Source: Octopus sinensis
Lineage: Eukaryota
Reading direction: 5' to 3'
DNA length: 64,000 nt
NCBI RefSeq assembly: GCF_006345805.1
Contig: NC_043014.1
Location: 4,278,001 to 4,342,000 of the forward strand
Of the stretch, positions 1,535-60,882 are shown piece after piece (position 1 is the stretch's first letter; the number at the start of each line of letters is the position of its first letter). Below the pieces are notes generated by a model. It had not been told where the DNA came from. It searched no databases and saw only the letters and a list, made by a program, of their open reading frames with translations. The position numbers and the translations under genes were made by a program.

Positions 1535-2034
1535 GTGTTGGTGGTGGACAACATTATTCCCATACTGGTGGCGGAAGTAATCTCTTGTGTCTACCCAAAG
1601 ATCCCATTTGGGCCAATTATACTGCAAATGTTGAAGATGGAGGTTGGATTTATGGCAGTGAATATCAACTACAGTTATACCCAACTAATAAAATCTTTTC
1701 TTTTGCTAACGCTGAATCAATTCATGATCACAACGTTCCGTGCGCTGTCTGTTTGACACGACAACCTGCTGTTGTTATGATGTTACCAGCCAGGACAAAG
1801 TGTTACCCTGGTTGGACGATTGAGTATTCAGGATATTTGATGGCTGAGCATCATACGAATAAGGGCAGACTTGAATATGTGTGTGTGGACTATGCACCAG
1901 AAGCTGATCCAGCGGGTTACAGAGACGAAAATGGAGCTGTATTATATTTCGTTCAGGCTGCTTGTGGTTCATTGCCATGTCCACTGTATGTCAATGGTCG
2001 AGAATTAACCTGCGTTGTGTGCAGTAAATACTGA
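1535..2034 (+). CDS. Last exon (exon 4) of array paralog U0; short-chain collagen C4 / spongin short-chain collagen-related (NC1-like) domain; exons 1-3 lie upstream of the window
   Basis: Acceptor ttctAG at 1533-1534. Open frame (G)[23 protein letters not shown]...[10 protein letters not shown]...[20 protein letters not shown]...YVCVD...[30 protein letters not shown] ends at TGA 2034. Motifs match the invertebrate short-chain collagen C4-like family from memory; no search was run. Confidence 0.85.
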
Positions 2035-3710
2035 ATCGAATTTACATTCGTTTCTATATGAAAATTTATGTCGGCGAATCATAAAATATAATATAAGAAA
2101 GCAACATATACGTTTCTTGAAATTGTGTTTCGCAATATCTTATCCAACTAATATATGTCGTTAAATAAATTGCTGCTACAAGTTTTCAGAAAATATTCAA
2201 AACGAAACAACAGAGACGTCATAGAATGTGACAAATAGCTTAACAGAACGATGTAATCCTCGGGGAATGATTCTAGAATACATTGTATGAGGTTCAGTTT
2301 ATCAAATTTAAATGTTGAAATAAAATGATGATTCGTTTAAATGTGTGTTGTATTCCGTCTTAAAATGAAAACTATCCCTAAATGAAACGCCTCCGTACAA
2401 ATATATCACCCTTCCATGATCAATCTTCAGAAAACACGAAAAAAGCTTATAACTAACATCACTAAATCATGATGGTTTAATTAAAAAAATTCTCCCATAC
2501 CTATCATTGTAACTACAATCGATGCGATGAAATCTCTGCAATCCAATCGCGGATATTACCTAATAAAGGATATTTGATATCCACTGAAGAAATACCACAA
2601 AATGTTGACTACCTAACTACTTGTCAGGTTACTAACACTTTGAAGTTTTCACGAAACACTTTCGACAAAGGTACAAGTACACGTCCCACGATTAACGATT
2701 TTCAACCTACATTCACATATTCCCGCTTTTCTACAAAAGTCACACACACACAGTCTCGCGTCACTTTACACACGCAGCCTCCTATCGTTCCCTGAACACT
2801 GATGTGCCAAAATAAAATATGAAACCACCATGAAATATGACTACACTTCAGGAACAGCATCAACCGAATCTACAGCAACACCACAAAACATCGAGTTCAA
2901 CAAATTATCTCCGTCTGTAACATAAAACTATCAAACTCGCAGAAGAGGAACTTGCTTCGAGATACATGCATACAATAACTGTAACACACATAAACGACTT
3001 AGTAAGGAAAGAAAGACGACTTATAAAATGTACATTAGGTGGAATCAGTGCAACATGTTGAGTCTTTCACACTCTACCCAGCATGATTGCTCCTTGTATG
3101 TGGGAGTTTGTAGAATGGCTGCCAGATAAACGAAGGTATCCGTGGAAAGAGGGATCTGTGGGTGGCAGCACGTTTTTTGTCCGATTCATTGCGTGCCATA
3201 AGAATGCTCGATTGTGAAAAGGCTAGAGAAAATGAATAATAATTAAGTAATATGAAAGCACGAAATGCAAATTGACAAATGAATATATGGAAACATTCAA
3301 CATGGCGTTCCAGTGAACAGTATTAGCGCTCAGTGTTAGGCATAAGCAATTTTTAGGTTCGTTAAAATGTGCTAATGGCATATTTCAAACTCTAAAGGCA
3401 AATTCTGTGCAAAAAGCTGCAAAAACAGCATGTCGGTCCAGTGCTGCTCCCTATCGGGTTCCAGTTCAGCCGTTATCAAAAGAAAATACCGAAGAGGGGA
3501 ATATCTGGACAAACTTAAAGCCATAGCTTTAACTTAAACATAGTCAACAACAACGAGTAAGTGACGCCATTAGAGCGCCAGGCTGGAGTCTGTCGTGAGT
3601 TACCTCCCTTCGGTATTTCTCTTTGATAAATTCTTCGCTAGAGGAGTTGACTTCAACCTTGTGCCCCAACAGTAACTGCGGTCGCTCGTACGGGCACGCA
3701 TCTTTCCTTC

Positions 3711-58300: not shown

Positions 58301-60882
58301 TGCTCACGCTTCCAGGTCTAGATATAAGATATTAAAGGATGTATATAAGAGCGTATGTAAGGAATCACGTCTATGCGTGCACACACACACGGCTGTGTGT
58401 ACGTATGTGCGTGCACACATACACCTACACACACACACAGAGACATAGGGGTATAGCTATAAGATATCAAAATATGCATGTACATATATGCGCGCGTTTA
58501 TGTATGTATGCGTATACATACGTACACGGACGCTCGCATAGTCAAAAGTGGATCTATAGGTAAGTAAATAAACATATATAGAGATGTAAAGCGATAAGTT
58601 AGGGGTAAGAATGAGGGTAAGGGTAAAAATTAGAAATAAAAGTAAGAAATACAGTATAAAATAAGAAATACAATGTAATAGTTAGAAATGAAATATAAAA
58701 ATTATAAAAATTATAAGAGTTAAGGTAAGGGATGAAAATGAAAATGAGAATAAATGGAAGTAGAATAAGAGTAAAAATAAAATAAAATAAAATAAGATAA
58801 AAATATAATTTAACATGAGATGAAGGTGGTTGAAAGTTAGAGGTGTGTGTTAAAAGTGTCCACGTAGGGGCGGGCGGGGGGAACTGAAAATTGGAAGGGT
58901 GGGAAGTGGAGTTTGGCGGTGTGCGTTCAACATCCGAGTTAGAAATGTGAAAGGGTATAGATATAGGGAAGTAAAGAGACTATATAGGAAGGATATGGGT
59001 GTAGGAGAAGAAATATTTAGGGAAAAGAAGTCATGTATGGGAGACAAAATTTGTATATATAGGAGGAAAATGCAGGGAAACATATATGCACATACACACA
59101 CCCACACACACACACACACACACGCACATATATATATATATATATATGTACATATACGTACACATATGTGCACATACATATACATACACACACACATACG
59201 CATATACATATTCTATGCTGCTGCCGCATTATGTCGTACGCGAATGGGAGGATTTGCATCCCCAACCAAGAACTTTTGATGTAACACATGCCCTTGTGGA
59301 AGTTGTTGTGCGCGGCTGAAGAAGGCCACAGACATACATTATGCATTGTTATAAATCTGTCTAATAAAGGCCCGAAACATATGTACCGCTGAATCCTTCA
59401 CATCTTGTTTTTATTTTGATCAATTTGCTCCACCACCTACACCATCAAACGGTATACACAGGTGCTTATAATTATCAAGTACTCACCCCGAATTTCTATA
59501 CTCTATATATATATATATATATATATATATATATATATATATATTATATGTATATATATATATATATATACATATATATATATATATATATATATATATA
59601 TATATATATATATATATATATATATATATATATATATATATATATATATGTATATATATATATGTTAATATATATCTGGCAGACTATTGACAATGAACCG
59701 GAAGGTCTTATCATATATTATAGTTAAATATTTTTAACAATGTTGCTATGAATACAGTTGAAGTTTAGGGTTTTCCAAAGAATTATTTAGAAGAATATTA
59801 TAACAAAAGGATAGAAATTGTTGAATATTTTTCTATTCATAAGTATTCATAAATTTCTTGATAATTTTATTAACTTCTATGCTGAAGTAGAGACAACGTG
59901 AACTTTGAGTATCTCCTTAACTTCTTGGAGATTTTAGGTATAATTATACTAATGTGTCAATCTGTTTTAATTTAATTAAATCCTATGTATTGGTGCAGCT
60001 GAAGATTCCACTATATTTTAAATTGATGTGATTATTGTATTGTTCAATTAAATGGAGTTGCATGAAACAATTGTACTGCATTATCTCTGGATATCCTTGT
60101 TACTTACTTTGATATATGTGTATATATATATATATATATATATATATTATATATATATATATATATATATATATATGTAAAGAGAATGCAAATGCACTGC
60201 TACGTTCTCGTGCATACAGTATCACACAGCTTACACTCATATAACACTAATATATACACCACAATTCGTTCACACGCGAGTAAACATGAATTCTTTTAAG
60301 GGTTAAAATGTAATGAATGTTTCCGTTAGTTCATATATAATTTTGCTTAATATCTTTTTACTTGATTTATTCTTACCAATTCAAGGTGTGGTTGGTGGAC
60401 AATCCTTTGACCACACAGGTGGCGGAAGTAATCTCTTGTGTTTACCTAACGATCCCATTTGGGCCAATTATACGACTGAAGTTGAAGCAGGTGGTTACAT
60501 TTATGGCAGTGAATATGAAATATCCCACTACTCAAATAAACTCTTTTCTTTTGCTAACGCTGAATCAATTCATGATCACAACGTTCCGTGCGCTGTCTGT
60601 TTGACACGACAACCTGCTGTTTTTATGATGTTACCAGCCAGGACACAGTGTTACGCTGGTTGGACAGCTGAATATTCAGGATATTTGATGACCGAGGGTT
60701 CTGGTCATAAGGGCAGACTTGAATATGTGTGTGTGGATTATGCAACAGAAGCTGATCCAGCGGGTTACAGAGACGAAAATGGAGCTCTATTATATTTCGT
60801 TCAGGCTGCTTGTGGTTCATTGCCATGTCCACCGTTTGTCAATGGTCGAGAATTAACCTGCGTTGTGTGCAGTAAATACTGA
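49347..60882 (+). CDS. Paralog U4: intact 255-aa type II membrane short-chain collagen C4-like protein
   Basis: Exons 49347-49490, 54114-54165, 56162-56236 and 60386-60882 (acceptor tcaAG). The frame is continuous to TGA 60882. Confidence 0.85.
49791..50175 (+). mobile_element. Near-complete tRNA-derived SINE (family 2), unique to U4 intron 1
   Basis: Head ggcgcaggagtggctgtgtggtaag...gggttcagtccc (A/B boxes), body ggcaagtgtcttct...gtagacggaaactgaaagaagcc, and an A-rich tail with repeated gagtaaa. Inserted in TA-rich microsatellite. Confidence 0.8.
53520..54020 (-). mobile_element. Helitron relic (U4 intron 1)
   Basis: Translation includes [20 protein letters not shown]. Confidence 0.8.
54430..55560 (-). 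mobile_element. Degenerate RTE-clade LINE relic, internally deleted (U4 intron 2)
   Basis: Has the same deletions as the U1 copy. Confidence 0.7.
57371..57448 (-). ncRNA. Type I hammerhead ribozyme motif (family B), antisense copy
   Basis: Exact reverse complement of 59312-59389. Confidence 0.75.
59312..59389 (+). ncRNA. Type I hammerhead ribozyme motif (family B), sense copy
   Basis: Stem I GCGG/CCGC, CTGAAGA, stem II closed by GGCC/GGCC, GAAA, palindromic CATATG, GUA triplet 59383-59385. Confidence 0.75.
59994..60080 (+). ncRNA. Degenerate hammerhead motif (family C), U4 sense copy
   Basis: TGCAG-CTGAAGA-...-GAAA-CAATTG-TA-CTGCA; stem III is a perfect palindrome in this copy. Confidence 0.6.

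What the first reader, a model, noticed from the sequence alone, without database searches (positions are those of the whole stretch)
1535..60882. Paralog divergence is concentrated in a few hypervariable patches of the ectodomain
Seen: the framework is almost invariant, but short patches differ in nearly every copy. Patch 1 (U0-U4): GQ-HYSH / HSAQ / KYDQ / FFDH / SFDH-TGG. Patch 2: EY-QLQLYPTNK / ELCLYPTNK / QLDLYPTKK / EISHYSNK. Patch 3: LM-AEHHTN / SGHTxH / SERHTH / AEHYNS / TEGSGH-KGR. Smaller changes occur in ANVEDGGW versus TEVEKGGY and RDEN / KNEN / RDDD. The changes are clustered multi-nucleotide replacements rich in His and aromatic residues. Inference: diversifying selection on a ligand-binding surface, as in immune or chemical recognition proteins.
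Basis: partly seen in the sequence, partly recalled or inferred. Interest (0 to 1): 0.72.

Follow-up and report, generated by a model that had tools for sequence, protein, structure and literature searches.

The report
Shuffled hypervariable loops in octopus paralogs
A tandem array of octopus membrane-protein genes differs almost only in a few short His/Tyr-rich loops, and those loops are old sequence cassettes swapped between gene copies by gene conversion rather than sites shown to evolve faster than neutral.

Summary
The window is Octopus sinensis DNA holding a tandem array of "short-chain collagen C4-like" genes. Each has four coding exons and encodes a type II membrane anchor, no collagen repeats and a 10-Cys NC1-like ectodomain. 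24 of the 40 variable residue columns fall in 32 patch codons (Fisher P 4e-12).

Recombination is pervasive (PHI P 0.0005, Rm >= 27 in 500 bp). Synonymous change inside the patches is about 3.6 times the framework rate. Patch omega is about 1 by four methods. In three O. sinensis/O. vulgaris ortholog pairs, patch dN (0.037) is no higher than dS (0.044).

Even so, the patches are about 10 times more diverged (pi 0.46) than the adjacent 3' flank (0.041). Identical patch haplotypes also recur in unrelated paralogs, and the patches assort independently. Best reading: a conserved scaffold in homogenised units carries old loop cassettes shuffled by short-tract conversion, probably kept diverse by selection. 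Only codons 9 and 38 keep support for beta > alpha inside the patches. Function and 3-D co-localisation remain untested.

The parts
1535..2034 (+). Gene A, terminal exon 4 (U0), intact. The upstream exons lie left of the window. Patches: P1 1552-1563, P4 1624-1647, P2 1666-1692, P3 1843-1860, P5 1921-1932.
4845..13430 (+). Gene B, a pseudogene. Exon 1 4845-4988, exon 2 9151-9202, exon 3 11331-11403 (2 nt short), exon 4 (U1) 12936-~13430 with 8 frameshifting indels and in-frame stops. P1 (HSAQ) at 12953-12964.
   Evidence: An intact twin, L003_81698, is 95.8% identical over the exon and 3' flank.
16479..31566 (+). Gene C, intact, 256 aa. Exon 1 16479-16622, exon 2 20733-20784, exon 3 27464-27538, exon 4 (U2) 31067-31566. 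Patches: P1 31084-31095, P4 31156-31179, P2 31198-31224, P3 31375-31392, P5 31453-31464.
34606..44752 (+). Gene D, intact, 255 aa. Exon 1 34606-34749, exon 2 39381-39432, exon 3 41950-42024, exon 4 (U3) 44256-44752. Patches: P1 44273-44284, P4 44345-44368, P2 44387-44410 (one codon shorter), P3 44561-44578.
   Evidence: The exon 4 product is 100% identical to P0013, O. sinensis LOC118767014.
49347..60882 (+). Gene E, intact, 255 aa. Exon 1 49347-49490, exon 2 54114-54165, exon 3 56162-56236, exon 4 (U4) 60386-60882. Patches: P1 60403-60414, P4 60475-60498, P2 60517-60540, P3 60691-60708.
   Evidence: U4 is a mosaic: P2, P3 and the flank are closest to L004_9011, P1 is closest to U3.
63476..63619 (+). 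Gene F, exon 1 only (membrane anchor). The rest of the gene lies right of the window.
4545..5245 (+). Example of the homogenised block around exon 1: about 300 nt upstream to about 250 nt downstream, pi 0.004-0.04 among the five units. The equivalent blocks surround 16479, 34606, 49347 and 63476.
2035..3684 (+). 3' flank of U0, used as the neutral yardstick together with the equivalent flanks of U1, U2 and U4: 1609 ungapped columns, pi 0.041.

Best explanation
The window carries a head-to-tail array of octopus genes: five terminal exons, three complete intact genes, one pseudogene and two genes cut by the window ends.

Each gene encodes a type II membrane protein with a short cytoplasmic tail, a signal anchor and a short acidic stalk. 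Its roughly 185-residue ectodomain has 10 Cys and is related to the non-collagenous C-terminal domain of spongin short-chain collagens. There are no collagen repeats.

1. Shown: strong purifying selection on the beta-strand and cysteine framework (omega about 0.25-0.3).
2. Shown: concerted evolution. Gene conversion or unequal exchange keeps most of each unit nearly identical, including non-coding DNA (the exon 1 block and the 3' flank).
3. Shown: four short loops carry old, highly diverged sequence cassettes. These are P1 after the first long strand, P4, P2, and P3 after the equivalent strand of the second half of the domain. The cassettes are passed between paralogs by short conversion tracts, so each gene is a different mosaic. 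Inside the cassettes non-synonymous and synonymous changes have accumulated at about the same rate (omega about 1). The cassettes are not mutating faster than neutral today.

Inferred: cassettes this diverged, sitting in DNA that is otherwise homogenised, are hard to obtain without selection that retains loop diversity, that is, selection against homogenisation or for new combinations. This is diversity-preserving selection among paralogs, not a demonstrated dN>dS arms race.

Inferred, and weak: the His/Tyr-rich loops form the specificity-determining surface of the domain, either for an external ligand or for choosing partners when NC1-type domains oligomerise.
For: Gene structure and architecture. 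AlphaFold gives pLDDT 87 and places all patches between strands.

Framework constraint: omega 0.29, 0.41, 0.25.

Homogenisation: the exon 1 block has pi 0.004-0.04 against 0.16-0.25 further out. The 3' flank has pi 0.041.

Patches older than their surroundings: P1 0.458, P3 0.461, P2 0.271 and P4 0.304 against 0.041 in the flank. None of about 1600 non-coding windows of the same size reaches these values. The result is the same across 18 paralogs for P1 and P3.

Raised synonymous change in the patches: alpha is 3.6-3.7 times the framework value, P 5e-9 and 4e-6. The tree-free count is 22 S steps against 8.8 expected, P 1e-4. Third-position pi is 0.40 against 0.11.

Omega about 1 in the patches.

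No present-day excess rate: in three O. sinensis/O. vulgaris ortholog pairs, patch dN is 0.037 and pooled dS 0.044, with 8 N changes observed and 9.6 expected under neutrality. Flanks differ by 0.012-0.05.

Mosaicism: PHI P 0.0005 and Rm >= 27. Identical 12-27 nt patch haplotypes occur in otherwise different paralogs, and Mantel r between patches is -0.09 to 0.12. U4 and L004_9011 differ at 15 nt, 8 of them within 15 nt at P1, while U4's P1 is 1 nt from that of its neighbour U3. Nearest relatives differ by region.
Against: The direction of events is not resolved: cassettes may be imported into young units, or old islands may be protected while the rest is homogenised.

Synonymous diversity in the framework does not decay with distance from the patches (rho -0.06), although a decay would be expected around long-maintained lineages.

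Non-coding divergence along the unit varies about 50-fold, so no single neutral yardstick is safe.

Only three ortholog pairs were available, one of them truncated.

The ML analyses use one NJ tree although recombination is present.

A few sites do show beta > alpha (codon 9 posterior 0.998, codon 38 posterior 0.986), so point-mutation positive selection may contribute.

The case for selection on diversity is an argument by exclusion. A neutral barrier, in which mismatches block conversion across already diverged loops, is not excluded.

No functional, expression or population data were available.
Confidence: 0.6

Rival explanations
1. Classical diversifying (arms-race) selection by point mutation. 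The loops bind a changing ligand, such as a pathogen or chemical cue, and amino-acid replacements are repeatedly fixed, so dN exceeds dS at the patch sites.
For: M2a vs M1a gives LRT 83 (P 9e-19) with omega2 4.6 for about 6% of sites, all in patches 1-4. If the synonymous rate is held constant, patch beta is 2.2-3.6 (P 1e-10 to 1e-17). Codons 9 and 38 have six residue states each and posterior P(beta>alpha) of 0.998 and 0.986 even with synonymous rate variation. In orthologs the patch N:S ratio is 8:1 against 7:12 in the framework (Fisher P 0.016). The loop composition is His/Tyr/Ser-rich, as in binding sites.
Against: The M2a signal disappears when the synonymous rate is free: patch omega is 0.69-1.02 and the LRT is not significant. 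Tree-free omega is 1.05. Ortholog patch dN (0.037) is not above dS (0.044). Recombination (PHI P 0.0005, Rm >= 27) is known to inflate M2a-type tests. Many patch differences arrive as whole cassettes shared with other paralogs.
Confidence: 0.2
2. Purely neutral loops. The patches are unconstrained surface loops that drift. Their large divergence reflects the age of the family, and conversion fails to homogenise them because heteroduplexes across highly mismatched short segments are rejected or restored. Occasional neutral conversion shuffles them.
For: Omega is about 1 in the patches. The ortholog patch rate equals the neutral rate. The same loops are variable across the whole family in other phyla (consensus 'x' runs). 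P2 sits in a lower-confidence, probably flexible loop. P4 and P5 are no more diverse than the 3' flank across 18 paralogs.
Against: Conversion demonstrably does carry patches between paralogs, so the barrier is not absolute. Patches of 12-18 nt flanked by near-identical sequence should be overwritten by ordinary tracts as readily as the 4-fold sites next to them, which have pi 0.11. Nearly every copy has a unique P1 and P3 (15 and 14 distinct haplotypes among the 18 O. sinensis copies). The strong His/Tyr bias and the conserved terminal His of both loops argue against free drift. Codons 9 and 38 show beta > alpha.
Confidence: 0.17
3. Artefact. The apparent hypervariability comes from misassembly, misalignment or pseudogenes in a repeat-rich region.
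For: The region is rich in microsatellites. U1 is a pseudogene whose indels are mostly in homopolymers. NCBI gene models in the cluster are chimeric and span several units.
Against: Four window copies and 14 further copies have intact reading frames with all Cys conserved. P1 and P3 align without gaps. Two independent assemblies (O. sinensis and O. vulgaris) give orthologs with the same cassettes. The proteins are in NCBI annotation.
Confidence: 0.03

Closest known systems
Spongin short-chain collagens ('short-chain collagen C4' of Ephydatia and relatives; Exposito 1991 and Aouacheria 2006, as summarised in PMC5395295)
   Same: There is clear sequence homology of the C-terminal Cys-rich domain: 48% identity and E 3e-43 to a sponge member (P0097), with hits across sponges, cnidarians, annelids, molluscs and amphioxus. 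The domain has ten conserved cysteines and no HSQ motif, as described for spongins (PMC5395295).
   Different: The octopus proteins have no Gly-X-Y collagenous domain. In its place they carry an N-terminal signal anchor and a short acidic stalk. They occur as large tandem arrays with hypervariable loops, which I did not find reported for the family.
Collagen IV NC1 domain (PDB 1LI1, 1M3D, 5NAZ, 8TYS)
   Same: It is the only structural class to come up as top hits for both AlphaFold models. The literature holds spongin NC1 to be homologous to it (PMC5395295). In collagen IV the flexible, variable loop regions of NC1 are key determinants of protomer formation and of protomer-protomer contacts (PMC6211539). 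This parallels the idea that the variable loops here set partner specificity.
   Different: No sequence-level match: Pfam C4 does not hit and a profile search of PDB sequences finds nothing. TM-scores are only about 0.22. The domain is smaller (about 185 vs about 230 residues) and is not attached to a triple helix.
Multigene families with hypervariable regions shaped by gene conversion (MHC class I/II peptide-binding regions, KIR/Ly49, plant NLR LRRs, snail FREPs). This comparison rests on general knowledge.
   Same: Shared features are a conserved scaffold, variation concentrated in short surface segments, mosaic sharing of motifs among paralogs, raised synonymous diversity in the variable segments, and tandem clusters with pseudogenes.
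   Different: In those families dN > dS at the contact residues and a known ligand support diversifying selection. Here patch omega is about 1, no ligand is known, and there are no population or expression data.

Membership tests
Spongin short-chain collagen family | Short collagenous (Gly-X-Y) domain N-terminal to the NC1-like domain | tested here: not met
   Genes C, D and E have no run of even three Gly-X-Y repeats. The Pfam Collagen model hits the sponge, amphioxus and octocoral members but not the octopus protein.
Spongin short-chain collagen family | Homologous C-terminal non-collagenous domain | tested here: met
   phmmer E 3e-43 to 1e-45 to the sponge Corticium and amphioxus 'short-chain collagen C4-like' proteins over 99% of the exon-4 product.
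Spongin short-chain collagen family | Ten conserved cysteines (seven shared with collagen IV plus three spongin-specific) and no HSQ motif (PMC5395295) | tested here: met
   There are 10 Cys in the ectodomain, at gene C residues 81, 109, 160, 163, 180, 207, 234, 239, 250 and 253. All are invariant or nearly invariant across 76 family members. HSQ is absent. I did not check which Cys correspond to which collagen IV Cys.
Collagen IV NC1 / Pfam C4 domain (PF01413) | Match to the Pfam C4 profile or to NC1 sequences in the PDB | tested here: not met
   No Pfam family at E <= 10. No NC1 chain found by phmmer or by a 76-sequence profile.
Collagen IV NC1 / Pfam C4 domain (PF01413) | NC1 fold | tested here: inconclusive
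   With the full-length model the top 9 Foldseek hits are all NC1 chains (E 7e-5 to 8e-4, probability 0.90-0.99), but TM is about 0.22. With the domain-only model the top hit is alpha2 NC1 at E 0.17 and TM 0.22.
Collagen IV NC1 / Pfam C4 domain (PF01413) | Two homologous tandem subdomains | tested here: inconclusive
   BLASTP of one half against the other gives only E 2.6, but in the expected register, with P1 LYSH aligned to HYGH of P3. The DSSP pattern repeats in both halves: a long strand, an 8-residue loop, E, then EEEE.
Recognition families under diversifying selection | Variation clustered in short exposed segments of a conserved scaffold | tested here: met
   Clustering has Fisher P 4e-12. 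All patches fall between predicted strands. Solvent exposure itself was not measured.
Recognition families under diversifying selection | dN/dS above 1 at the variable sites after allowing for recombination and synonymous rate variation | tested here: not met
   Patch omega is 1.0, 1.05 and 0.69-1.02. Orthologs give dN 0.037 vs dS 0.044. Only single sites, codons 9 and 38, pass. The naive M2a test passes, but its assumptions are violated.
Recognition families under diversifying selection | Variable patches co-localise into one surface | not testable with these tools
   The coordinates of the AlphaFold models are not exposed. Only pLDDT and DSSP strings are returned.
Recognition families under diversifying selection | High or trans-species polymorphism at the variable sites | not tested
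   No population data were available. Across species, three ortholog pairs retain most cassettes.
Tandem arrays under concerted evolution with conversion-resistant islands | Tandem paralogs whose non-coding DNA is homogenised, with recombination signals inside the genes | tested here: met
   The units are collinear over their whole length. The exon 1 block has pi 0.004 and the 3' flank 0.041. PHI P 0.0005 and Rm >= 27. Mosaic pairs are documented.

The most novel reading that the evidence does not exclude
Octopuses may have a germline-encoded cell-surface recognition repertoire. Dozens of membrane-anchored NC1-like proteins would have their specificity set by four His/Tyr-rich loops that are combinatorially reshuffled among paralogs by short-tract gene conversion. 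The repertoire could serve non-self or chemical recognition. Alternatively it could act as a homo-/heterotypic assembly code like collagen IV chain selection, moved onto the cell surface.
Probability: 0.2. Interest if true: 0.8.

Novelty: new variant of a known kind. Interest (0 to 1): 0.5.

Why it matters
If the loops set specificity, this would be a previously undescribed class of variable surface receptor in cephalopods. Cephalopods lack adaptive immunity and are known for large expansions of recognition-type gene families. The scaffold, an NC1-like domain, has so far been linked only to matrix assembly.

There is also a methodological lesson. The standard site test (M1a/M2a, M7/M8) gives an overwhelming false-looking 'positive selection' signal here. 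The cause is cassette exchange and local synonymous-rate heterogeneity. The verdict changes once a local synonymous rate, tree-free counts and ortholog comparisons are used.

Tried and rejected
P0010 and P0012 were used instead.
2. The P0013 locus, which would have placed the window on the chromosome, was not returned because the gene model spans 117 kb. P0014, P0020 and P0028 are not on record.
3. Pfam and sequence searches of the PDB found nothing for the domain.
4. I looked for a decay of framework synonymous diversity with distance from the patches, as a hitch-hiking signature. None was found.
5. The internal-repeat test by BLASTP was not significant.
6. The domain-only model did not improve the structural match to NC1.
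7. Local hypermutation of the patches was considered and rejected, because orthologous patches differ by about 3%, the same as the flanks.
8. Simple relaxed constraint since a single duplication was rejected, because the patches are about 10 times more diverged than the adjacent 3' flank.
9. I did not find literature on cephalopod members of the family beyond a single ink-proteome peptide.

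
Full report
WHAT IS THERE

The window is eukaryotic, AT-rich and full of microsatellites. Self-comparison shows a head-to-tail array of units of about 11-18 kb.

It starts at an AG acceptor at the same position in all five copies: 1535, 12936, 31067, 44256 and 60386. Its product finds 298 relatives. The closest are Octopus sinensis, O. vulgaris and O. bimaculoides proteins named 'short-chain collagen C4-like', followed by Argonauta, bivalves, annelids, amphioxus, octocorals and sponges. 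U3 is 100% identical to O. sinensis LOC118767014, so the window is O. sinensis chromosome CM016876.1.

Using full-length relatives as guides, I found four coding exons per gene:
- Exon 1 encodes [48 protein letters not shown], a signal anchor.
- Exon 2 encodes a short acidic stalk.
- Exon 3 encodes the start of the Cys-rich domain ([24 protein letters not shown]).
- Exon 4 encodes the remaining 166 residues.

Genes C, D and E are intact (256, 255 and 255 aa). Gene B is a pseudogene, with a 2-nt deletion in exon 3 and eight frameshifting indels in exon 4. Genes A and F are cut by the window ends.

The ectodomain has ten invariant Cys, one invariant NYT sequon, no Gly-X-Y run and no HSQ motif.

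CHECK OF THE OBSERVATION

Among the four intact window copies, 40 of 166 columns vary. 24 of them lie in the 32 patch codons and 16 in the other 135 (Fisher P 4e-12). Adjacency of variable columns has permutation P 0.0013.

I added 14 intact exon-4 copies from four other loci on the same chromosome. The pattern is the same, with up to eight residue states per patch column and 90 of 167 columns invariant. Patches 1 and 3 are 24% His, against 1.8% in the framework.

TEST OF THE INTERPRETATION

I wrote codon-model likelihood code because PAML and HyPhy were not available. M2a vs M1a gives LRT 83 (P 9e-19), with omega2 4.6 for about 6% of sites, all in patches 1-4.

That model assumes one tree and one synonymous rate, and neither assumption holds:
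- The PHI test gives P 0.0005, and at least 27 recombination events are needed within 500 bp.
- A partition model with a separate synonymous rate for the patches gives alpha_patch 3.6-3.7 times the framework (P 5e-9 and 4e-6). Patch omega is 0.69 for P1-3 and 1.02 for P1+P3, neither significantly different from 1.
- Tree-free counts of minimum steps per codon column give 77 N and 22 S steps in P1-3, omega 1.05, against 0.41 in the framework. The 22 S steps compare with 8.8 expected from the framework rate (P 1e-4).
- Pairwise NG86 on the window copies gives patch pN 0.36 and pS 0.36, against framework pN 0.029 and pS 0.095.
- A FUBAR-like grid with synonymous rate variation leaves only single sites with posterior P(beta>alpha) > 0.9. 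These are codon 9 (P1), codon 38 (end of P4), K90, P93 and a few two-state sites.

RECENT EVOLUTION

Three O. sinensis/O. vulgaris ortholog pairs were identified, with flanks differing by 0.012-0.05. Since the species split the patches have accumulated 8 N and 1 S changes, and the framework 7 N and 12 S (Fisher P 0.016).

Patch dN is 0.037 and pooled dS 0.044. The 8 replacement changes compare with 9.6 expected under neutrality. The loops are therefore much less constrained than the framework. They are not evolving faster than neutral and they are not mutational hot spots.

WHY THE PATCHES ARE STILL UNUSUAL

Within the window, the 1.6 kb 3' flanks of U0, U1, U2 and U4 have pi 0.041. That is about the same as the interspecies ortholog divergence. 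The patches have pi 0.458 (P1), 0.461 (P3), 0.271 (P2) and 0.304 (P4). None of about 1600 non-coding windows of equal size reaches these values. Across 18 paralogs, P1 and P3 also exceed every window in the aligned 3' flank and proximal intron, whereas P4 and P5 do not.

At the rate seen in orthologs, such differences cannot have arisen since the flanks last shared an ancestor. The patches are older than the DNA around them.

Homogenisation is directly visible. Exon 1 with about 300 nt upstream and 250 nt downstream has pi 0.004-0.04 among the five units, rising to 0.16-0.25 further out.

MOSAIC STRUCTURE

Identical patch haplotypes of 12-27 nt occur in paralogs that otherwise differ:
- HYSH in U0 and L002_19537.
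- FFDH in U3 and L001_49734.
- U0's patch 2 in L003_95506.
- TEYYKH in three copies with three different versions of patch 1.
- SSLHAE in two copies.

Distances at different patches are uncorrelated (Mantel r -0.09 to 0.12), and only weakly correlated with framework distance (r 0.16-0.23).

U4 and L004_9011 differ at 15 of 501 nt, 8 of them within 15 nt at patch 1. U4's patch 1 is one nucleotide from that of its array neighbour U3. For each window copy the nearest relative is a different paralog for the flank, the framework and each patch. L003_81698 is the intact counterpart of pseudogene U1.

This is the signature of short-tract gene conversion moving loop cassettes between paralogs. It also explains why synonymous and non-synonymous differences are raised together.

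STRUCTURE AND FAMILY

AlphaFold models are confident: pLDDT 87 for P0010 and 86 for the domain-only P0012. All patches fall between strands. In P0010 numbering:
- P1 is residues 97-100, after strand 85-95.
- P3 is residues 194-199, after strand 185-194.
- The same strand/loop pattern follows both, so P1 and P3 probably occupy equivalent hairpins of two half-repeats. The sequence test of the repeat is not significant.
- P2 lies in a lower-confidence loop.

Foldseek returns collagen IV NC1 chains as the only coherent class of hits, but with TM of about 0.22. Pfam has no model for the domain.

The literature defines spongins as a short collagenous domain plus an NC1-like domain with ten Cys and no HSQ motif (PMC5395295). 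The octopus proteins meet the domain criteria but lack the collagenous part and are membrane-anchored. In collagen IV, variable flexible loops of NC1 are key determinants of protomer formation (PMC6211539). Partner-choice specificity is therefore as plausible a role for these loops as binding of a foreign ligand.

I found no report on the cephalopod members apart from one ink-proteome peptide.

VERDICT

The best-supported mechanism is a constrained scaffold in units homogenised by conversion, carrying old loop cassettes that are shuffled among paralogs. The persistence of those cassettes in otherwise homogenised DNA is most easily explained by selection that preserves loop diversity.

A dN>dS arms race is not shown. 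Pure neutrality is not excluded. Surface co-localisation, ligand, expression and polymorphism are untested.

Noticed in passing
window 3711-4425, 15101-16061, 33251-34187, 48520-48923, 62539-63056: A 0.4-1 kb imperfect (TG)n tract ends about 420 nt upstream of the exon-1 ATG in every unit. The near-identical block around exon 1 begins just after it. It could be a boundary or a promoter of conversion or unequal exchange.
   Followed up: partly
window 2527-2678, 13914-14065, 32061-32203, 61374-61525; 22927-22986; 24922-24972; 25832-25945; 10529-10555, 22130-22192, 40549-40614: Sequences matching the alternative N-terminal exons of the NCBI models P0001, P0002 and P0004 lie between or inside the units. 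They include a second copy of exon 2 in gene C's long intron. These isoforms would lack the canonical signal anchor, so they may be real alternative first exons or annotation artefacts.
   Followed up: no
O. sinensis CM016876.1 (loci L001, L003, and the P0013 gene): NCBI gene models for P0004, P0002 and P0013 span 40, 86 and 117 kb, that is, several tandem units each. P0013 also leaves U3's exon 6 residues before its stop. This suggests read-through or chimeric transcripts, or model errors in the array.
   Followed up: no
window 4845-13430 (gene B); L006 5159-5658; L007 22443-22790: The family contains pseudogenes and broken copies. Gene B/U1 has mostly homopolymer-length indels. One O. vulgaris copy is frameshifted. 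The O. vulgaris ortholog of L002_19537 is truncated by a (TA)n insertion after codon 115.
   Followed up: partly
window 16479-31566 (gene C): Unit C is about 18 kb, against 11-16 kb for the others, because of an internal partial duplication of roughly 24.8-28.5 kb that matches 9.0-12.3 kb at 72-87% identity.
   Followed up: no
Codon 90 also changes in two of the three ortholog pairs.
   Followed up: partly
protein family: Signal-anchor, collagen-less architecture is not limited to cephalopods. Two bivalve members (P0063 Ruditapes, P0081 Mercenaria) look the same. Collagen repeats were seen only in amphioxus, octocoral and sponge members.
   Followed up: partly
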